A stretch of 63,735 bases of DNA, the filler included, from Reticulomyxa filosa (taxonomy: Eukaryota; Protista; Foraminifera), in NCBI GenBank assembly GCA_000512085.1. It is 15 parts of 15 records of this genome, joined end to end, with 100 filler letters (N's around TTAATTAATTAA, not from the genome) between each part and the next. Parts side by side here need not be neighbours in the genome. Positions count along the whole stretch, not along the records: positions 1 to 15,811 come from ASPP01020131.1; 14 more parts are not named here. One strand, given 5' to 3'. A program made the translations under genes and the position numbers. The notes under the pieces are model-generated. The model had not been told where the DNA came from. It saw nothing but the letters and a program-made list of their open reading frames with translations, and made no database searches. Shown here piece by piece: positions 191 to 15,811 of this stretch. Each line of letters starts with the position of its first letter. Position 1 is the first letter of the stretch.

Positions 191-1210
191 AATCCACATA
201 CCAAAATGACCACTTCTGACAGAATTGACCTGATCCAACAAAGTGGAGCCTTGCCCAGGCTCGTTGATCTGCTGGGACATCCCTCCGTACGTGTCCAACA
301 TCCAGCTCTGCGTTGCATTGGAAACATGGTCACAGGCAACGCCGAACAAACACAAGTTCTTTTCTTTTTCCTTTGCTTTTTTTTTTTTGTGAACACAAAA
401 ATAAATAAATAAAATAAATAATAAATAAAAGCAAGTCTTAAATTGTGGCATGCTGAAAAAACTGGGTCCATTACTGGAATCGCCACATGCGACCATTCGG
501 AAGGAGGCTTGCTGGGCAGTGTCGAATGTGACAGGGACGAATGAAGAGCAAGTGCAACAAGTGATCGATGCAAACTTACTGCCTTCGCTGATCCATTTGC
601 TCACGTCAAATGACTCCGCGGTGCGACAAGAAGCCGCCTGGGCGCTAGCCAACATCACCAGCAGGGGGACTCCAGAACAAATCCACTTGCTTGTTGACCG
701 AGGTGCTGTCAAAGGCCTGATCAACGTATTGAGGCAAGCCACCGACGCACGCAATACCATGGCCATGCTGGAAGCCATTCAAAACATTTGTGAATTGGGA
801 AAGGCAATCAAAGATATCCATGGCGGGGTTAATTTGTACTCTGAATTCGTCGAAGAAGCAAAAGGCCTTCGTCTCGTATGTTTTTTTTGTTTTATTTTTT
901 TCGATGACTCAGGACAAAACATGTTTGTATACATATATATATGTGTATATGCAAGTTGGAAGAAATGCAAGCACAAGAGTTGAATTCGAAAATTCATGAT
1001 AAAGTCGAAGAGTTGCTATACAGATATTTTGAAGATGACAAATTAGCTCAATTGCACAACGACAATGACAATGATGACAATAGTAACAATGCAAATGGTA
1101 ATGACAATGACAATGAAATGGATGAAGAGGTTGATCTCACTGGCGATTTGATCACTGTCCATGCTCGAACAAATCAAGGGGACACAACCAACGACACTTA
1201 CAAATTTTGA
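2..1210 (+). CDS. KPNA: Importin-alpha (karyopherin alpha), 5'-partial; exons about 2-355, 432-875, 956-1210
   Basis: ARM-repeat motifs ALPRLVDLL..PALRCIGNMVTGNAEQTQ, KEACWAVSNV, QEAAWALANIT, and a C-terminus EFVEEAKG..LEEMQ..IHDKVEELLYRYF. GT-AG introns at 356-431 and 876-955 keep the frame. Confidence 0.93.
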
Positions 1211-1745
1211 ATTTTTCGGGGACATTGACACAAAAACAAAAAAAGAATGGAAAAGAGATCAATTTGATTACTCATATCATTTGGCATTTTATTTATATAA
1301 TTTTTTGGGTTTTTTTATGTTGTTGTTATCGTCGTTCAATGTGACAAGAATAATGATAAATGTGAGACGTGCTTGCTGTGTGCTGATTTTTCTTTTTCAG
1401 TCCTAGCAGTTTCAAAATCCCAATACATTGAGAGAGAAAAAAAACACATAGGAAGGGAAAAAGAAAAACATTTGTTGAAATTTATAGTTTGTTTGTCTTT
1501 TTCCTCTGTTTTTAAGTTGTTTTATTCTTTCACCGCTTTGAGACAACTCTTGGAGCAAAAGTTGATATTGTGCTACTATCACTTTTTTCAATCAAATCAA
1601 ATAATTCTTTGTTATTTTTTTGTTGTCCATAAGTGAAATTGAATTAAAATTTAAATAATGTAGGAAATTGCTACTCGAGAAAAAGTGCTTATTTTTTAAA
1701 TCGTATTGAATAGTTTGCTGTTCTCTATTTTGATTATCCCAAAAA

Positions 1746-4540
1746 ATGACTTTCAAAGAGAAAATACCTCTCTCTTATCAAACTAAACATTTGCTGGATT
1801 ACTGTTCTCTACTATAGTTTTTGAAAAGGGTTGTGCTGAAGGATAAAAAAAAAATTATTATTTGAGAAAATTAGGTGGCTTTGTGGACGATACTTGTGAC
1901 TATGGAAAAAACTCAAAGTTTGACCTTTAATGAAAAGCTAGCACTTGTATTATGCGAGCATTTTACACCAACAAGCTGGCATCGGATTCGGCTGTCTTGT
2001 TTCAAAGAAGCGTGGCAAAGTGTTTTTTGGGGCCAAACCTATTGTATCGACACACTGAAGGAGGTTCCATTTTTGTCATATGATGTTAGTAGCAGCCACG
2101 CACAACTTTTGCTTAAAAGCCTAAAAAAAAAGACAATATAAAAGTTTTGAATTCAGGATCGAAGCAAAAACATTAAACATAACAATAGGACAGCAACGAT
2201 ATTCTGTGCGCGGCATTAGACGTTAAGCAGAGGGTGGGATTGAGGATACATAAGAGCGAGTGTGTTGTTTTTTTTTTTTAAGCAAACTGACAAACACAAA
2301 TGACTTATTCACAGAAGAGGGATTTCTGTATTACCTCAAATTGTAAGAACTGTCAAGGATTGCACTTGTCTTGGGAAAAATATGCAGTTTTGGAGCATAT
2401 GCCATATATGCATATACATAGTTTTTTTATTTGTGTACTCTTGGCACATGAGCGTCCATTATTGCTTCCATTGATCAAAAAGTTAACATACACATAAACA
2501 CATTACAATATACTAACAGCATTTATTTCCAATGTGGGTATGTTTTATTCACTTCTCCCTTTTTTTTTTTTTTTAACCCCTTTTTTTTTTTGTTTGTTTA
2601 TAAGGAAAAATTTTTAAAAAATAAAAAACGAAATGGGATCGTAGGATATAACAGATCGCGTTTTAAATGTATTGGTTCGCGACTGGCTGGAAAATGGCAA
2701 GCAAAGTCGTGCTCTTTGCTATGCCGCCATTTGTGACAAAATGCATCACATGTTCCACCAAGACAACAAATGGGGTCGCCCTCTTCCTGAGTACAGAATC
2801 GCGCATATCCCCCATGTCCAAGTTGTCCGTGACAATGCCACACAGAAACGCTGCTATCTTTTGAAACCGGCCTTTTTGCAAAACTTATCAGTTTCTTTCC
2901 TTCTTTTTTTTTTTTAAAAGGGTTGTAACTAAATATTTTTTGCACCCAAAAAAAAAAAAAGAATTATGTATGCTGGTTCGAAGTCACCAGTCACACATGC
3001 CAGAAGTTTCATTGCTATTTGGGCAGTTGGATGGATTATCTACACTTCAAGCAAGCAGTTGACTCTTGTTTGTGTGTTTGTTTGTTTTGCTTACGCATGA
3101 TATTTGAATATGTTTTTGTTTTTATCTTTTTTTTTAAATAAATATCATTTACAAACAATAACATGCACAACATTCCAATGTAAAATTGGCACAATGTACA
3201 AAAGAACGAAACGGACTTAAATGGACTAACGCCTTACGTTCTCAATGTCACCAATGCAATCGTTCCTAGTGACGAATGCTGGAAGTTTTGGAAGAGTATA
3301 AAGCGGAAACACAGTTTAAACAAGTTTTTTTAAAAAAAAAGAAAAAAAGGAGAATATAAAATTTTTTTTTTCTGGACAGCCCCTTGTTACATGCATCAAT
3401 GCTATACTATATATATATGTACATACATATAGGAAGGCTTGGTTTGTTTTGTATGAATCTGTTGGATGGGGTGGGGAAACAGATATTCCCGTGGTGGACA
3501 TATTTTCGATGAATGTGTTTAAAGTTGGCCGGGTGTCGCTCCCGAACGTGCCATCACATTCGATTGGCACTTGGCACAATATTTTTAATCTGTGCAATTA
3601 CTCGTATTGTGGCAATCGCATTGTCACGTGTAGACTGATTACGTGTTCAGAGGGAGTTTTGTTTGTTTTTTTTTGTTTTTTTTTTTTGCAAATTTTGTTT
3701 TGTTTTTTTTTTTTTGTGTGTGGGTATGTATGTCTGTGTGTATGTTTGTGGTGGACCACACATGGTTGTGTAGGAAAGATAGGAGGTTAGAAATGGAACG
3801 ATGTGGGTGATAAACTACAGATGAAAATATCAATAAAGTCGCTTCCCTACAATATGAGCGAAAAAAAGCTGAAGCAGTGGATAGTGCAACAGGGGAACAT
3901 AACGGAAAAGAAAATTGTCGATGCGCTACATGTCGAAATACAAACGTTTGTTCGCAATCAATCCAAAACCAATTCTTATGAACACGATCGGTATGACATT
4001 AGCTTGCAGCTCTTTTTTCTCTCCAAAAAAGATCTGAAATGCGCTATCCGAAAACTGCAAGAGTTACAGACCAACAAAAATCTCCCGCTCCCCTTTCTTC
4101 ACATGCAGCTTAGTCTTGCTATGCTTCCATCCAAAACTCATGTTAATTTTCACTTGCTTTTACTGTTGCCTTTTCTTCGTTCCTTTCTTTTGCGTGACAT
4201 ATATTACTCTTTTAATAGCTCTTCAAGCCATTCAACCAAGTCAAGTTTTTTAACTTGTACAGCAAACTACGTCATGAGTTTCATTGCTCGGAGAAACCGG
4301 GTCACAAAGATATCCTATCTCAGTTAACAAAAATGGAGGAAAATGAAGGATAGAGTGCAAGATACAAGATCCAATATTTTTGTTTTTTTCTTTTCTTTTC
4401 CTTCTTTCCTCTCTTCCTCTTCTCACAGGAAGGATTCATCGCAGCGCCACAAAAAAAAAGATTGAGCAGTGGAGATAAGAAAAAATCAAAAAAAGATGAA
4501 CCAGAAAGCAAAGAAAATGAAGACAATCCCAATCACTTAA
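1746..4540 (+). CDS. Hypothetical multi-exon protein with a possible C-terminal RRM-like domain
   Basis: Coding-like blocks (1875-2110, 2640-2890, 2960-3060, 3433-3655, 3791-4100) separated by poly-T/A introns. KISIKSLPYNMSEKKLKQWI resembles RRM RNP2 plus helix A. Boundaries are uncertain. Confidence 0.4.
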
Positions 4541-5601
4541 ATGAGTTTTGATTTTATTTTTTCTTCTCTCTCTACCTCTCTGCTTCTCTCAATGTTGGAA
4601 GATATCATATCCAATGGTATTAAACATACAAAAAGCAAAACACGGGAACTTTCAAAACTTCGAGCCAACCATGATGTCCATGACAAATTACCATTTCAAT
4701 TATTCTGCAAACAAAGTGGTCTCCCACTTTCCTTGGAGCTTCACAATTCCAAACGGCCATGCCTCTCGGACCAATCTTTAACAGATATTTATGATTAGCC
4801 AAAGAGACTCACATTCATTGAGAGTTGATTTCTTCCTAATTTTTTATTTTTTAAATGGTGTAACAAAATCAAGACAAACCAGAGAACTAACTATGCTCTT
4901 CTAATATAGAAAATGTATCAAGGCACTTGTTTATAAAATCAGTAGAGAACCGAATCATCAAGCGAAAAAACATTATTGTTGACGTTACATCTTATTTTAT
5001 TGTCCTTCTGTTTCAAAGAATTTAGTTTATTATGGACATGAACGATAGCATGTTGGATAGATTGATATGTGTGTTTGGGCTTCTGTTTTTAAGGCATCTT
5101 AACGCTTTTTTTTTTTCTAGGTGCATAAAAAAATTCCATTGAACAACCTGTGAAAAAATTCTCTTCTTCTGCACAACTGGCCGAATATTTGGTAGTTTAC
5201 CTCCACTCCTCCGTGTTAACCGAATGACTGCGCATTTTTTCCTAGGCCACACATTTCATTTTATTAAGTTTTTTAAGGTTGTACGGGTGGGTGGAGAACT
5301 CTACAAATTGGAAATCAATTCTAACAAAAAAATTTCAAAAACTTTGTACAATCAACAAGCAAAAAGAAAAAGCAGGAAAATTGAGATTGCCTTTTATTCT
5401 CTCACCAGTGTTGTGTTTTGGCTTCCAAACAATCGTAAGTCAAAAAGAGTGATTAAATTACGGCAAAAAATATGTCAACCTATTTCAATCATATCCAGAG
5501 GAGGAAAGAAAAGAAACGAAAACAAAAAGGATTATCACTCCAGACTAAGCAAGTGTATCAAAAATGAATATGAAATGAAATGGATTTGTTTCTGAAGTTC
5601 A

Positions 5602-8186
5602 CTAATCAAAGGAACATATCAAAGTTGCTTTATCTAGACCAAGTTCTTTTAATGTCTTTTTTTTCTGATCATTGAGTTGCAAGCGTGGCATTGCTTGTGC
5701 CAAACTTATATGCTCTTTGCTACAGGTCAGTTCAACAAATCGATAAATTTGCTGTGAAAAGAGAAATGAAAAAAAAAAGCAAATAATGCCAAATAAACAA
5801 TAAGCAAAGAAGCAAAAAGTAGAACATATAAGATATTTCACTAACCTCGACTAACGCCGATTTTTTAAATCTGCGTTGGAGAACTCCACCATCGGGCAAG
5901 CGAACACGCAACACTGTAGAATCTGGGTCCGATTCTATATAAAAATTGTTATGAAAAGTCCATTTACGTATAGTCGCGTCATCATGGCCACCCTTTGACT
6001 TTTAAACAATCTCAATAAATTACAATCAATTTGACAAAAATGAAGCATTAACGTGAAGGCTCTGGATCTAAACGAACAGGTGTATCCTGTTGAACAAAAA
6101 AATACAACCAACTCAATTACTCTTTGTTCAAACGAATTGCACAAAGGAGTGTTAGAAAGAGATGTGAGGAAATGTCTTTTCGTTTCTGCTTTGTAGCAGT
6201 ATTTTGTCTTTTCTTTCAATTCATTGATTCATTTTTTTGTGTGTTTTTTTTGATAATAATGAAACTTTGTCTTTGATCTCGACATCAGTGGATTTTCGAT
6301 CATCATTGTTTGTTTTGCTGTTCTTATTGTCGTTAGAAGGTGCATTATCTGTCAATGATTCCAGCAATGCTTTGTTTAGTTCTTCATCTTCACCACCCAG
6401 CTGTATCAACAATGCACGACAAAAATATCAGGGTGTAATGTGTGGTCAATAGTTTCGAAAAGTTGAACACATACAACTTTAAAAAAACAAAAAACAAAAC
6501 AGCAGGCATTTGTGGGGAAGGAGTGGCTTTAATGCGCGGCTGATATCCAGATTTCTTTTTTGCAGAAGGATTTGGAGCATTTTCAATCCACTCAATTAAT
6601 TTGTCGCGGATCGCAGAAGCTTGAGCAGGGAATTTGTCAGCTGATGGTACAGGCAAAATGTTTTCCTGTCGTCCAGTGTGCGGATCGATGACACTGACAT
6701 GAGGAAATTCGGTGATTTTATAATATGAGCACATTTGTCGCCCAGCGTCGGTTGACCTTTCATGCTGTCATTTTTAAAAAACAGTTACAGCGTTGAGTTC
6801 GAGCAAGTTTACTTATATATACACATGCATATATTCTTATATATATATATATATATTATATACATTCACAACTCACAAACTCACAATTCACACTGGTCAT
6901 ATATATGCACCACCATAGGTACCCCGACACAAACCTGATAAAACAAAAAAGAAGATTTTATAAAATCAGAGGTTGTGGAATCTTTCCAAACGTCTCTGTT
7001 CAATGTATGCGATGCAAACTCGTCTTTGGATTGGACATTTAGCAAGATCCATTTGTTTTGTTTTTGTCCTTCCGCTTTCGCCTTTATACGTCATTTACAG
7101 TTTGATCAACAAACAAAGACAAAGAGATTCCTCCTTTTTTTTAAAAAAAGGTTAATTTTTTTTTTTAATTCTTTCACTAACTTGATCCCATGAACCTTCA
7201 TACTTGTACTCAGGGTCCCCAAACAAATCGGCCAAATGGTCAGACTTTTTTGTTTTCGGGCCTTTGTTCCATTCTTTGCCGATATTTCTTTTGTTTTGAT
7301 TTTTATTTGTTTGTATTGTTTTTGTTGACATCGTTTTGTCAAAATTTAAAAGTTAGTTGCACAACTCAAAAACAAGCAATTGTTATGTGGCTGCATTTCC
7401 AACGTCATAACAAAACCCAACAAATTGACCTCAACTTTGATGATGCTGGGGCATATCCAGGCCCAGTGAAAGCACTGTAATTGGCTGTATTAATTTTTTA
7501 AAATATTTTTTATTTACTTGATTTTTTTTATTATTAATGTGATCATTTTTTTTTTTTTTGGAATGAACTTTTTTTATGTTGAGCGCATCTCAAAAAAAAA
7601 AAAAAAAAAGGGGTTGTTTGTATATATTCTACATAACAAGGCAACAGTTGCTCCGTATAGGCACGATCAGCGGAACGGATTTCACCATCACCAAAGGAAT
7701 CCAACGCACTTCCATCGTCGATGTATTCTCTCTGTCCTGCACCGCTGGTTCCTCCAATTGCTCCCAACAAGGCAGGAATACCACTAACTCCCTCGCTTTT
7801 CCAATATTTGCATTCATTACATAACACACGCACAACAACAGTCCCCCGCCCTCCTTTCCAAGTGAAGAAGCAATTTTTTAAATCCCTCTCTTCTCATCTT
7901 TCTAAAATGCAAGTAGTCGGTTTTTTTTTTGTAACCTAAATGCCCGTGCGGAATTGGAAGGTAGAGTAGGGGCGTCATAACTGGAAACCCGGTTGATAGA
8001 CTGCAATTGAGAGATATCACCACCGGAAGACAGCCATCTGTCTACTGCAGTGTCTAAGTTCCACTCACACAGTTTTAAATATTCCTTGGCTGTATCAACG
8101 TCATCCGTGCCGGCAAGAGTTAAGAAGTTCATCAGTTTTTCCATTTGAGATTCACTCAAATCTGTCGAAGTATTTGTCGAAGTCAT
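5602..8186 (-). CDS. UBXN7: UBX domain protein 7 / Ubx5-like p97 adaptor (UBA-UAS-UIM-UBX), multi-exon
   Basis: UBA-like N-terminus (NFLTLAG..AKEYLKLCEWNLDTAVDRW), UAS domain (FASHTLNRDVW; YYKITEFPHVSVIDPHTG), UIM (EDEELNKALLESL) and UBX (LRVRLPDGGVLQRRF..LKELGL). Confidence 0.92.
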
Positions 8187-8809: not shown

Positions 8810-11800
8810 TTAGAAAGGCAGCCTTGCCCAAAATTTAATAACCTGTTTTGGTTTTACTAGTTTTTTATCATGTTTTTTCGATTCTTCATATGCACATTTA
8901 TATGCAGTAGCACAATGTTTCCATGTGAACAAATAGTGTGGAAACTGTTTTAATTGTATATCAGGAAGATATTTTTTCAATAAATGACTAAATTGTAAGC
9001 CTTCGTTTCCTGATGTGTTTCGTTTAGTTTGTCCTTGTTCATAAGCTATTTTACGCCACACGTTTAATATGCTCTTTGTGGTACCCAATGATGTCCTATT
9101 AACAAATTCTTTGACCTCTGTTTCAATTTCATTGGTCAAAGGTTGTTGATATATGTCAAGAACAAATGAAGCAATTGAATTTTCATCCAACTGCTCCGAT
9201 TGAACTGAAGTTTTTAATTGTTTCCACAATGCTCCAATATGTTTGACAAAGAGTTTACTGGTTTTATGGTTGGCATCATTTAATTTATCAAATATAATCC
9301 AATCTTTTTTTTCAAATTTCAAGTCTTTAAACAACTCTGTCAATTCTTTATCTATATTAACTTCGTCGATATTTCGAAATAAGTGAACAATAGCATCATT
9401 TACCATTTCCAATGCTCTCTGCTTTTGCAAAGGATACAAAGTGGAAAAACGTAAGCTGTTCCAAAATGATTGAAATTGAGCATCTTTGAGAGCTTCATAT
9501 TTGTTTTCAATGGCTGTAATGCAATTGGGAATGTCAAATTCATTGCGATATTCAAATAAAGGGATAATAAAAGTGATTTGTTGACGACCATGAACAAAAG
9601 TGTGATAGATATCACTTTCAATAGCAGCTAAGTTGAAATATTTGGATATATCAGATTGACCATAATCCAATACTGGAGTACTTCGTCGTTGAATGATTGC
9701 ATTTAACGTTTCTGGATTAAAACATAAAATATCGCGATCTGTGATATCAAACACGCTTTTCCAATTGCGTTGCTCATTATTATTTGAATTTTGTTCTTCT
9801 TTCTTTTCTTCAATAATCTGAATATGTGGATGTTTAGATTGCGCAAACTCTTTCAAAAATTCATTTTGTTGATGTTCCAAATGTCGAATTATTTGATAAA
9901 TACTGAATTGTGAATCATTTACATTGGAATTGGTGATGCATACTTGATCAATAGGTAGATCTTTAAAATCGCGTTGAAATTGTGGACAATTCGATCCAAA
10001 ATAATTCCAATATTTCACAAAATAATTCTTTGAACATTCATACAAATGTTTGAGCATTTGATCTTCTTGAATTTTATGCAATTCATCTGGCATCAATTGT
10101 CGAGAGTATTTGTTGTGAACATATTGGATCAAGCGTACAATATTTGGTAGATATTGCAGATACCAGATACACTCATCCCAATTCGATAGTTGAGCAGTGA
10201 GTGAATAACTATTAGCCAGAGATGGATTTGCAGTAAACACATGGAATAAATCTCTCCATGACAAAGGCTCAACTTTTAAAAATAATTGTGGGAGATGCTC
10301 TATCTTATAACACTTATCTAATTCTTTGATTTCCTCAATTTCACTCATCAATTCTAACCACTTTTTCTTCTTGTCATCATCTGATATAATTTCACTCTTG
10401 TTCCGGAGTTTAATGAACTCGGCTTTGCAATTAAAAAATGTTGAATACTCTTTGTCCAACTTTTCTTCAAATTCACAAATTACTTGCAAATCATTGTTTG
10501 GCAATCCTTTAGGATACCATTCTTTAAATTTTTCAAAAAAGTTTTTAATCCATAGATGAATGGCAATGCATAGCAGCTCTTCACTCAATTTTGTCAGTAC
10601 TTTTAATTTTTCAAAAAGAATCTTAATCTTTCTCCATAAATACTTAGATGAATTCTCTTGATTAGTTTGTCCTATCAATTGCTGAATTTTCTTAGTATCT
10701 TGTGGGATACTTTCATTTCGTAAAAATAATAACAAATGGTGCAACAATTGCAACAATGTGGGTATTAAAGGTTTCAATTTACTCGATTTGCATTGAAGAG
10801 ATGTCATATATCTCTTAAAATAACAGAGCCAGCTCTCTTTCATATCTATTTCTGTTGTATCATTTTGTTGGATTGGCTGTTTGAGAATTGTCTTGACAAT
10901 GGAAGCTCCACGACCATTCATTTGACATTTCACTTGTTTCAGAAGGTCGTCTGACTCGTCGATTGAAAGTGCATTATTGTTCAAACAACCATGCACTATT
11001 AAAGGCTCATTCGAGGTAGTTGATGTAGGCAAACATGATTCGGAGTCGGCCAATAGCAATTGAAATGGATTGCTTTTCATAAATGGAAGAATGGACAGAA
11101 AATGGAAACCTAATGTTGCCACAATTATATCAACTGTATCTCTGATAGGTAATTCACTTTTGAAATCGCTCCAATAAGTGAAGACTTGCCAAAAGATTTT
11201 TTGTTTTGTGATTCCCAATAAGTCATGACGTAGAATATATTTATGCAATCCTGTCATTTTTTTTTAACTAGCAAAATTGCAAAGAAAAATACATAAATTT
11301 AAGAGAGAAAAAAGACTCAAAAGCTAAAACACAAAGAAATTGACTTTGTATTTGATCGGTGGCGTTGTAGTTATCATGGAAACGGATTAATATTAGTGAT
11401 TCTGCAAGCATTTGGGGAGAAAAGAGCGTATCCAATGAGTGATTGTCTAACATATCTGCAAACTTATCATTCATAATTTCCAGTATATATTCCATAAAAG
11501 CACTATCTCCATACACTCCGATGAAAGGATTGAACGAAATATTACGCAATGTCCTTTTACACAATGAATTAAATATAGTACTTGTCTTTAATTCCTTCAA
11601 AAAAGGAAATTGTGTTCCAGCACTTGGGTGAGCGAATATGATTTCAATCCAATGCATTCCTTTCCTTGCGTACAGTTGTTTCAAAAACCATACATATAAA
11701 GCATGTTCATACTGTTTATAGAAACTACTGAAATTTGACAATGATTCACTTATATTTTCCAATAATCTGAATATACTTTGATTTTCTTTGAGTTGTGAGA

Positions 11801-14800
11801 GATCAAAATTCTCATTAACCATCACGGAAATAAGGTTGGTAACATCCACTTTCACTTTTGAAATTTTCGCAACTGAGCCAAGACTGGTGGTATTTTTTTC
11901 ATTACATAACTGACTCCAAGTGTTGTTATCCTTCTTTATCTCTTCGTTCAAGGTTATCAACTCGAAACAACGATTCAACAGCACTGCTTCCTCAGAATGC
12001 AAGGTAAGGCTGTTGTTTAACTTTGTATGCAACACTATTTCTTTATATATTTGCATTTTGAAAATGGGTCCATTGTCGATCTGTGAATACAATTTCCGCA
12101 AAATGGACGTATATACTTTATTCTTCTCTACATTCTCCACACGTTTGATTGCGGCAAGTAAGTCTAGAATGAAATCAGCATATTTTTCCTGGGATGTATT
12201 TCGGTTTTCGCGATAGTCTTTGAGGACAGAATCGACTAGTTCTTCATGTTCCAAAAAGCCATGCTTAATTATTTTTTGTTCTTCAATTGCAAATCCGTCT
12301 ATTCTCAAATATATGATACCAAGGCGACGAATTTCAATTTTTCGTGCACTTTGTAGTAGCTCATTCATAAGACTTTCACTCTTTACTAGCATGCATTGGG
12401 ATAAGAAATTTAAAAAATTGTGATAAAGCATTGCGCTCTCGTTTATGTCAAAGTTTGCTCTTATTGGGATCTCCTTCCAAAGAATCTGGACCGTTTCCAT
12501 AAGCCATGATTCGGGATCTGGAACATGTTTCACACGTATTTTATCCGAAGAGACAGAGATTAGATATGCGTAATGGAAAATTATTTGACGAAAATAATGT
12601 ATGGTCACTTCAATGGTGGCAATCGACAATTTGCCACATAATAGTAATGCCATAGACACAATGATATTTTGTAGAATAATTTGTTGATTTTGCGTATGCA
12701 AATGCGATGAAAATTTATATCGAACCAAGTCCATCACATATTTATGGATTACCTTCAGAGAATAGTCCATATCCCATTGTGTTAAATCATCATTTCCCAT
12801 TGACATTTCTTCCAACTTTGTCGCAACTGAACCAAGATGATCGTTTGGCGACTTGGGACATTCCAAGAGTTTTTGTTGACACCAATTATGAATAGAACGA
12901 CTGAATGGAAAAGAATGCTGCACATATGTTTGAATTGAATACAATTGAGGGTCAATTACAGCTGAAAGCAGGTAATTGGAGTCAATACTCACTGGCTTCA
13001 TTTCAACTAATTCTTCATTTCTCAATGCCTTTTCAAAAAATTGGACATACCATGGCAACTCATCATTTTTTTTGCTTTCGACGTATTTCTTTGAATTATT
13101 TGTAATATGTGCTATTAAGTGTAAATGGTGACAGTAAATAAAACAAATAAAACACAAATAGCAAAACTGCAAAACCACCATTTTGATAAATGGCAGATAA
13201 CACATTGACAAAAGCCAAAGTTACCAAAGTATCAACGGTATTGTGATACTCTACGAAATAAGAACCTTTTCTTTTTTTCATTCCATTTTCCTCTAGATCA
13301 CGCAAAATAGTCATAACGGATTTATGCTTTGTGGCGTTGAACAAGAGTCCTTTTAGTCGATACTTGAGGATTTCTTCACCATCCTTGAAATCAAACACTA
13401 ATGGCAATAGCTTTTTTTCTTCCAACGGATTAATGGAACGTGGAAAATGTAGCCTTCCAAAAGCTTTCTGTGCACACTCGAGTAAATGCTACAAAAAAAA
13501 AAAGTGTAAATATCTATCATTTATTTAAAGAAAATACGAAAAAGCAATACTTCACCTGTTTGGATTGTTTTTCAGCAACATCATTCACTGAGAGTTTCAA
13601 ATCATTTTTTAATGATATTGTGTTTGTTGACAGTAAGTAATCGACATAGACAATCTTCCACTTCCTATTTTTTTTTTAAAGAAAAAGAGACTGCCTTTTA
13701 TTTTTTAGTAAAAAAAAAAGGGGTTTGTTTTTCTAAACTGTCGGAATATTAAAGGAAATGATAATTCTTTGTTGGATTTTCCATTTAATTCTTTGATAGA
13801 TTTTTTGCTGGATTCTCTGCTGGAATGAATAAGTAAAATAACTAATTTTTGTTTTTGACTGTTATTTGAATCATTATAAAACTGATAATGTTCAAGTTGG
13901 AGAATATGAATGATTTGCTCCAATTGATTTTTACTTTTGGGTGTATAACGACATTGCAAGATCAATACATCATTCCGTAGTTCATTTTGAAAAACGCTTT
14001 GATCGTCTTTTCAAATTGCTCTACTTTTTTGAATGATCGAATTTTTTGAGTGCAGTGAACCCGTTCCATTGGAATATTATATTCCATGTCGTTTGTGAGT
14101 ATCATCACCATTTGATCTTTAGATTTCTTTTGCTGGATCTTTATGATATCTTCCTTTTTTATTTTAATTTTATTTGTATTCACAAGAGATAAGTTATATC
14201 TCAAATTAAAAAAAAAAATTATCTCTGTTTACCAAGCAATAAAATTTTATATCTTTATCGGTCTGTATATTCGTCATTATTTCTGGTCGATACAATGGTT
14301 TGAATAGATTGAGTAATTTCGTTTCCAATTCTTTTTCGTCAAATCGGACAGTGTCTAAATTTGTTGTTTGTGGTGACTCTTTTTTTCATCATTTTGATAT
14401 TCATTTGCTTCCTTTGCTTTTCGAACAGCCAAATAAAGTAATGCTGAATAAAGGGTATCCTGACAATATCCACAAAACACGTCAGATAGATTGCTCGATT
14501 TGGATTTATTTAACAACATTTTTTCCATGGATTCAATACACGATTCCATGTTACTTGGCAATGAATTGCGATATGAAATGAGCTGTTTCTCAAAACGACT
14601 GAGAAATGCAAGCTATGTGTTATTTCACATGTGTACATTTATATCCCATACATGTCATACTTATCTAAAAAAAAAGTTAACTGGCATATTTGGACTGTGG
14701 GCATCCTCTTTCTGAACAACGACAACACATTTGAAATTTTCATGAACATAACAATCTCTACTTTCAGTTCCCAATGCCACTCGACAATACACATTCCCTA

Positions 14801-15811
14801 TTTATTTTGAAATAATTTTATAATGCGTATATATTTACATTAAAAAAATAAAATAAAAATACCTGAAGGTCTTCTTTGATATCTTTGATTCAACATATCA
14901 TACAAACTTTCATAAATACTTTCCAAATTGTGCAAAATGACAGTTTTACCAATATTCATACAATCAATAATTTTGTTCAATTGATTATAACTGGTAATAT
15001 TCGAATACATATCTTGAGGAAAATAACTTCCAAATAAAAATACTTGATTGTAATTCAAAATATCGTATTCCAAAAGTAATTGCCAAGAATAATATTTTTC
15101 ACTGATTACCATACAATGTCGACTCACCATCAAACCATTTGATGACTGATCACATTCCATTAAATTTCTTTCCACACACATGACAGGAGTCCATTTCTTT
15201 AATTCTAGCAAAATTTCCTCTTTTGTTTTACCTAACACTTCCACTAAAATCTTCTGCAGCTGTTCATTGTAATTGGTACTGTCAACTCCACCAAAGTTAC
15301 GAAGGTACCCTTCTAATGGTTGCTTGTCAAAAAATTCAGAAAGAGTGGCTTGATATTTGATCAATGCATAAAAATCACGTGCTCCAAAGAAATCACTATT
15401 TCCATTGGGTTTAAATGCATTCGTTTGATCTTTTATTATTTTTTCATATGCCATTATTATTTTTGTAATTGCCTGTTCTGAAAATGTGGGTTCGAGAATT
15501 ACTTTTGCTGTTTCCATCAGGTCATTGTGGTCCATTAAAGGAATGAAATGCATAATCATTCGATTCATTTTGGCAGCATCCAAAGACCAATTCGAAATGC
15601 CAACAAATGCAATTTTGGGATGTTCCAATAATTGATGCAATATTTTCAAAGGATTGTGTGGTGATTGTTCTGCCAAACCAATCTCATCAAATAAAAATAA
15701 TGTGGTAGTGGTTTTGTCATTGGAATATCTTTCAGTCTGATCCCATAATTCTTTGATAGCACTTGGCTTGCAACTTCTTGTACCTTGGAATGAAATGCAT
15801 TGCAATGGTTT
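8810..15811 (-). CDS. RNF213: RNF213/mysterin-like giant AAA+ ATPase / E3-module protein, 5'-partial, multi-exon
   Basis: RNF213 AAA motifs FLFDEIGLAEQSPHNPLKILHQLLE, AFVGISNWSLDAAKMNR, FFGARDFYALIK, LFGSYFPQD, LHNLESIYESLYDMLNQRY, YCRVALGT..CYVHENFKCVVV and FLSRFEKQ. Also an E3-core-like WFLKQLYARKG and a CTD-like YFNLAAIE..FVHGRQQI. Confidence 0.9.

What the first reader, a model, noticed from the sequence alone, without database searches (positions are those of the whole stretch)
10915..11036. Catalytically degenerate 'pseudo-RZ finger' in the RNF213-like protein
Seen in sequence: CLPT...HG-CLNNNALSIDESDDLLKQVKCQMN. From memory, human RNF213 reads FLPT...YT-CPNGHPCSVGECGRPMEQSICIDC. The two align without gaps and keep C, N, S, E, Q and C. 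However, the Zn-ligand His becomes Asn, the active-site Cys (EC) becomes Ser (ES) and the last Cys becomes Asn. With the RING also missing, both known ubiquitin-transfer elements appear lost while the surrounding 815-aa ORF remains intact. Inference: this is a pseudo-ligase, sensor or scaffold paralogue that may partner active RZ-bearing copies. A Ser-based transfer mechanism is less likely.
Basis: partly seen in the sequence, partly recalled or inferred. Interest (0 to 1): 0.85.

Follow-up and report, generated by a model that had tools for sequence, protein, structure and literature searches.

The report
Enzyme-dead RNF213 copies in a foraminiferan
In the amoeba-like protist Reticulomyxa filosa, most sampled copies of the immune ubiquitin ligase RNF213 have lost their catalytic site but kept its zinc finger; this copy has lost the zinc finger too, which points to a large family of non-catalytic helper or decoy copies beside a few active ones.

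Summary
The contig is R. filosa ASPP01020131.1 (gene RFI_23105). The '815-aa ORF' is the last exon of a spliced RNF213-like gene. A paralogue profile places 10987-10910 on the RZ finger of human RNF213 (E 3e-18).

Loss of the catalytic Cys is not special to this copy. It is missing in 22 of 27 sampled R. filosa RZ segments and was lost at least twice. In this copy's clade the His base and ubiquitin-binding helix are also gone, and the CTD E2-contact acid appears changed. All 26 paralogues keep the four zinc ligands. No RING was found in any paralogue, including Cys-bearing ones, so there is no RING loss to explain.

The two long exons have no stops and only in-frame indels; dN/dS is mildly relaxed (0.6-0.7 vs 0.4-0.45). 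Two upstream -1 frameshifts in homopolymer runs are probably assembly errors. No reads were available to check them or expression.

Best reading: a maintained pseudo-ligase clade, with this member released from zinc-finger constraint. A partnership with active copies is inferred, not shown.

The parts
10910..10987 (-). Degenerate RZ finger: C91 and C111 kept; H>N95 (CAT>AAT), catalytic Cys>S102 (TCA), fourth ligand C>R116 (TGT>CGT); no general-base His downstream
10995..11040 (-). Place of the RZ N-terminal ubiquitin-binding MP[ED] helix; deleted or replaced here and in the whole Cys-less clade
   Evidence: function from bioRxiv 10.1101/2025.10.14.682297
8810..11250 (-).
8960..9000 (-). CTD E2-docking patch; His (8986-8984) stands at the column that aligns with mouse D5101; W5097 and E5108 equivalents not recognisable
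   Evidence: residues from bioRxiv 10.1101/2021.05.10.443411
11251..11344 (-). Last intron (GT-AG, 94 nt, position shared with paralogues); contains the ATG of the 815-aa ORF
11345..13111 (-). Long exon of the N-terminal part of the E3 module, open, no CxxC or RING
13175..14797 (-). Five short exons (late AAA region) with GT-AG introns shared with paralogues
14380..14390 (-). -1 frameshift in an A7-G run relative to three paralogues (assembly error or recent lesion)
13984..13994 (-). -1 frameshift in a T5-C-A4 run relative to three paralogues (assembly error or recent lesion)
14863..15811 (-). AAA+ exon (RNF213 AAA4-AAA5 region), Walker B FDEIG intact; the gene's 5' part is cut off by the contig edge

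Best explanation
This is a member of a large R. filosa clade of RNF213 pseudo-ligases. SHOWN: the clade's ancestor lost the RZ nucleophile (Cys>Ser), the general-base His and the ubiquitin-binding helix. The four zinc ligands and the surrounding E3 scaffold stayed under purifying selection. This copy then lost two zinc ligands by single-base changes, while its reading frame stayed open and its constraint loosened modestly. SUGGESTIVE ONLY (few copies, loose alignment): the CTD E2-contact acid changed in the same clade. INFERRED from human mutants: it cannot accept ubiquitin from an E2, and its RZ loop no longer binds zinc. INFERRED mechanism: the AAA motor and the (off-contig) N-terminal arm still find and coat targets such as engulfed microbes or membranes. 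The dead E3 module acts as a scaffold or decoy. Ubiquitin output, or its damping, comes in trans from the few RZ-active paralogues, as in active:inactive TRIM pairs.
For: 22 of 27 RZ segments lack the catalytic Cys, and 26 of 26 paralogues keep all four zinc ligands. The Cys label changes 3 times on a tree built without the RZ columns, at least 2 forced. MP[ED] helix: present in all 5 Cys+ copies and in the 2 isolated Cys-less copies, absent in both large Cys-less clades. The D5101 column is D, N or D in the three Cys+ copies with a CTD, and H, F or K in Cys-less ones. Clade dN/dS is about 0.4-0.45. The query branch is 0.60 (<1, p=0.03) and 0.72 after masking. 0 stops are seen against 13-17 per exon expected if the excess were neutral time. 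About 8-10 query-specific indels are all in frame. Human C4516S and H4509A are inactive, yet still coat Toxoplasma vacuoles. TRIM49/TRIM51 is a precedent for an active:inactive pair.
Against: Two upstream frameshifts could be real. Expression was not shown (no runs listed). The N-terminal half and Walker A are off the contig. dN/dS on this branch is above that of most siblings. There are no interaction data. The CTD mapping rests on few copies and a loose profile alignment. In human cells RZ-dead RNF213 fails to coat bacteria, so a dead copy may not reach targets by itself.
Confidence: 0.6

Rival explanations
1. This particular copy is a recently killed pseudogene. The two frameshifts are real, and the zinc-ligand losses are early decay. 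The clade-wide Cys loss still stands.
For: Two -1 frameshifts. Highest well-estimated terminal dN/dS in both long exons; 0.72 is not distinguishable from 1 in the 13111-11345 exon. It is the only one of 27 to lose residues invariant in all others.
Against: No stop and no frameshifting indel in about 1,400 codons of the two long exons. All seven introns are GT-AG. Single-base frameshifts, mostly in homopolymer runs and with no in-frame stops, also occur in paralogue contigs L001, L002, L006 and in Cys-bearing L008, which looks like assembly error.
Confidence: 0.2
2. The Cys-less copies have left the ubiquitin pathway altogether. They act alone as AAA-driven binders or remodellers, or as decoys for microbial anti-RNF213 effectors, and the retained zinc finger is a structural or new interaction module.
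For: Coordinated loss of the recognisable ubiquitin and E2 contacts. Cys-less copies outnumber active ones about 4:1. High family dN/dS. A second clade has Arg at the nucleophile position. RNF213 is targeted by bacterial effectors in mammals (titles).
Against: No robust positive-selection signal: branch-site hits trace to a locally frameshifted, misaligned stretch and appear on another branch too. No new domain was found.
Confidence: 0.13
3. The protein is still a ligase, using Ser102 as an oxyester nucleophile or a cryptic second E3 site.
For: Ser is kept in 12 of 15 clade members. ZNFX1 proved to have a hidden second E3 domain.
Against: The His base, the ubiquitin-binding helix and (in this copy) the zinc site are gone. 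Cys>Ser is the standard dead mutant in RNF213 and ZNFX1. Three clade members lack the Ser. No RING, U-box or Miz-like motif was found in the sequenced part.
Confidence: 0.05

Closest known systems
RNF213 (mysterin), RZ-type transthiolating E3 ligase
   Same: AAA+ module, E3 scaffold, RZ position and CTD are all homologous (E 1e-32, 3e-18 and 3e-19).
   Different: No RING; nucleophile, general base, ubiquitin-binding helix and two zinc ligands missing; one of dozens of paralogues rather than a single gene.
ZNFX1 RZ finger (Pfam PF20173)
   Same: Same finger ancestry; R. filosa paralogues hit PF20173 at this position.
   Different: No helicase or Miz domain; this copy no longer hits PF20173.
TRIM RING pseudoligases, e.g. 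the TRIM49/TRIM51 active:inactive pair (PMC11992055)
   Same: A paralogue in an expanded E3 family that lost its E2~Ub-engaging features and may regulate an active relative.
   Different: RING scaffold chemistry rather than an RZ catalytic Cys; there the pairing was shown, here it is only inferred; here dead copies are the majority.

Membership tests
RNF213 family | Dynein-like AAA+ module | tested here: met
   (E 2e-32, AAA4-5 part); Walker B intact; the rest lies off the contig
RNF213 family | E3 shell/core with RZ position, and CTD | tested here: met
   profile hits to RNF213; Foldseek top hits
RNF213 family | N-terminal arm / CBM20 | not testable with these tools
   the gene is cut by the contig edge at 15811
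RNF213 family | RING domain (mammalian RNF213) | tested here: not met
   no RING motif or Pfam hit in this gene or in any sampled paralogue, including Cys+ L008 and P0030; not a copy-specific loss
Active RZ-type E3 (PF20173) | Four Zn ligands C4505/H4509/C4525/C4528 | tested here: not met
   C, N, C, R
Active RZ-type E3 (PF20173) | Nucleophile C4516 | tested here: not met
   Ser, codon TCA
Active RZ-type E3 (PF20173) | General base H4537 | tested here: not met
   no His within 14 residues after the finger
Active RZ-type E3 (PF20173) | N-terminal ubiquitin-binding helix | tested here: not met
   MP[ED] helix absent
Active RZ-type E3 (PF20173) | CTD E2-docking residues | tested here: inconclusive
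   D5101 column is His, a Tyr lies near Y5106; the alignment is loose
Pseudo-ligase (pseudoenzyme) | Catalytic residues lost, fold homology kept | tested here: met
Pseudo-ligase (pseudoenzyme) | Gene maintained by selection | tested here: inconclusive
   clade yes (omega about 0.4); this copy has open long exons and omega 0.6-0.7, but two unverified frameshifts
Pseudo-ligase (pseudoenzyme) | Expressed and biochemically inactive | not testable with these tools
   no runs listed; needs an assay

The most novel reading that the evidence does not exclude
R. filosa runs an RNF213-based cell-autonomous immune repertoire with division of labour: many repeatedly evolved, selection-maintained RZ pseudo-ligases act as diversified sensors or decoys and feed a few catalytically active RNF213 executors, like sensor/helper NLR networks. 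This copy is the most advanced step, in which even the zinc finger is dispensable.
Probability: 0.3. Interest if true: 0.8.

Novelty: new variant of a known kind. Interest (0 to 1): 0.52.

Why it matters
RZ fingers are a recently found class of E3 active site. My searches of the held literature found no description of natural RZ pseudo-ligases and no paper mentioning RNF213 in Reticulomyxa; subscription papers were not searchable. The family gives a natural series: active copies, Cys-less copies with the helix kept, Cys-less and helix-less copies with zinc kept, and this zinc-less copy. That series separates the catalytic from the structural role of the finger. It also makes testable whether RNF213 has ligase-independent or in-trans functions, an open question for mammalian RNF213 too. 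This single copy matters less than the clade, and could be a recently dying gene.

Tried and rejected
Direct Pfam and PDB searches of the last exon and the preceding exon gave nothing. A profile of the N-terminal E3 exon found no PDB match, so I could not show by alignment that the human RING is an insertion. The AlphaFold model has pLDDT under 50 over the RZ and says nothing about its fold. The ESM Atlas returned only dynein/WASH-like helical look-alikes with a low recognition score. Positive selection on this branch was rejected as unreliable: the top sites cluster in a locally frameshifted stretch just after the RZ, and L002 gives the same signal. The raw omega of about 1.1 in exon 13111-11345 fell to 0.72 after masking indel-adjacent columns. 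The 2014 genome paper was not held. No RZ-covering homologue from other foraminifera was found.

Full report
IDENTITY. All close homologues of the last exon are Reticulomyxa filosa proteins. The piece is the reverse complement of contig ASPP01020131.1 of assembly GCA_000512085.1, and the gene is annotated as RFI_23105, 1,760 aa. The minus-strand exon at 15811-14863 matches the AAA4-5 region of mouse and human RNF213 (E 2e-32) with an intact Walker B. Seven GT-AG introns lie at positions shared with paralogues. The 5' half of the gene is beyond the contig edge.

POSITION. Alone, the exon hits neither Pfam's RZ model nor any PDB chain. Its paralogues bridge the gap. P0013, P0020, P0022, P0030 and P0049 hit PF20173 at this place. 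A 24-sequence profile of the region aligns with human RNF213 across the RZ (E 3e-18), and a C-terminal profile aligns through the CTD (E 3e-19). An HMM of the paralogue fingers scores the query at residues 88-121, E 5e-9. Foldseek's best hits for both models are RNF213, weakly for the RZ-containing half; the RZ itself is modelled at pLDDT under 50. The segment is a true RZ remnant.

RESIDUES. Human RZ uses C4505, H4509, C4525 and C4528 for zinc, C4516 as nucleophile and H4537 as base (bioRxiv 10.1101/2024.09.24.614677; 10.1101/2021.05.10.443411). It also uses an N-terminal helix that binds ubiquitin (10.1101/2025.10.14.682297). This copy has C91, N95, C111 and R116 at the ligand positions, Ser102 at the nucleophile, no His after the finger and no MP[ED] helix. 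Most of the family spaces the last ligands C-x4-C, so the fourth ligand became Arg, not Asn. Both ligand losses are single-base changes, CAT>AAT and TGT>CGT, and neither is a homopolymer slip. I could not check them against reads.

FAMILY CONTEXT, THE MAIN RESULT. Of 27 R. filosa RZ segments, some of them near-duplicates or alleles, only 5 keep the catalytic Cys. All 26 paralogues keep all four zinc ligands. On a tree built without the RZ columns the Cys label changes three times, at least twice by well-supported branches (P0005, P0008 and P0059 left out as near-copies). The query sits in a 100/100 clade (15 sampled members by motif and tree) with mostly Ser at the nucleophile. A second clade has Arg or Ser. 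P0044 (Gly) and P0037 (Arg) are isolated losses that still have the helix. Both large clades lost the helix. The column aligning with mouse D5101, an E2 contact, is Asp, Asn or Asp in the three Cys+ copies with a CTD, His or Phe in the query's clade and Lys in P0044; this is suggestive only. So catalysis was dismantled in a coordinated way, while the zinc site was conserved over long branches. No RING motif or Pfam hit was found in any copy, including Cys+ L008, which covers AAA to RZ, and P0030. The missing RING is therefore the family's normal state, not a second loss.

IS THIS COPY ALIVE? I fitted codon models exon by exon with my own GY94-type script on 6-8 loci. The background omega is about 0.4-0.47. 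The query branch gave 1.07 and 0.57 unmasked, and 0.72 and 0.60 after masking indel-adjacent columns. These are p=0.06 and 0.09 against background, and the last exon is below 1 at p=0.03. The RZ stretch has no excess of amino-acid changes (6.9 in 30 codons against about 7.4 expected). Long death is excluded: 13-17 nonsense changes per exon would be expected if the excess reflected neutral time, and none is seen. About 8-10 query-specific indels are all in frame. Against this, two -1 frameshifts lie upstream near 14385 and 13987, both in homopolymer runs. Similar single-base shifts, with no in-frame stops, occur in L001, L002, L006 and in Cys+ L008. That pattern favours assembly error; from my own knowledge, unverified here, this assembly used 454 reads. 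A very recent inactivation cannot be excluded, because no run was listed. Branch-site signals of positive selection were traced to a locally frameshifted stretch and rejected.

MECHANISM. Shown: homology, residue losses, their clade-wide and repeated origin, conservation of the zinc ligands in all other copies, and maintenance of the long reading frames. Following from known biochemistry: Cys>Ser and loss of zinc ligands each abolish RZ activity, so this protein should not transfer ubiquitin, and Ser-based catalysis is unlikely (0.05). Inferred: it serves as a non-catalytic AAA sensor, scaffold or decoy working with or against the few active paralogues (0.6). RZ-dead human RNF213 still coats Toxoplasma vacuoles but not bacteria, and TRIM51 represses its active paralogue TRIM49 (PMC11992055). 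Rivals are recent pseudogenisation (0.2) and a ubiquitin-independent role (0.13).

NOVELTY. No held paper mentions RNF213 with Reticulomyxa, and I found none describing natural RZ pseudo-ligases; the library lacks most subscription papers. Pseudo-ligases in expanded E3 families are known, so this is a new variant of a known kind. The interest lies in the clade more than in this outlier.

LIMITS.

Noticed in passing
L010:7-17254 (ASPP01010825.1): What looks like a near full-length RNF213-like gene split over four annotated genes. Its RZ (P0044) has Gly for the catalytic Cys and a poly-Asn run after the finger, an independent loss next to the canonical P0049. It is the best locus for a whole-gene view.
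   Followed up: partly
L008:11-8943 (ASPP01001449.1): Cys-bearing copy split into two annotated genes, with a single-base frameshift in a C run at about 5844; no RING between AAA and RZ.
   Followed up: partly
P0019, P0033, P0039, P0059, P0060, P0037: A second Cys-less clade, plus P0037, has mostly Arg at the nucleophile position and a basic loop, with the zinc ligands intact.
   Followed up: partly
P0020 residues 28-66: Keeps the catalytic Cys and the helix but shows no His base after the finger.
   Followed up: no
window 10780-10830 (-): Short compensated frameshift-like changes (+1 codon, -1 codon) just after the RZ; the net frame is kept.
   Followed up: yes
window 13778-13825 (-): 48-nt in-frame, duplication-like insertion absent from three paralogues.
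   Followed up: no
window 6221-8186 (-): Neighbouring gene with an N-terminal UBA-like domain (7902-8186, missed by the annotation) and a Thioredoxin_7 domain, resembling UBXN7-type p97 adaptors; probably a chance neighbour.
   Followed up: partly
window 450-1637 (+): Armadillo-repeat gene; looks like the C-terminal part of importin-alpha.
   Followed up: no
window 1875-5595 (+): Unannotated exon-like ORFs, one with a weak RRM hit (3803-4327, E 0.003).
   Followed up: no
P0045 cluster (P0050-P0056): RNF213-like C-termini from the acantharian Phyllostaurus siculus and marine metagenomes; their RZ regions were not covered.
   Followed up: no
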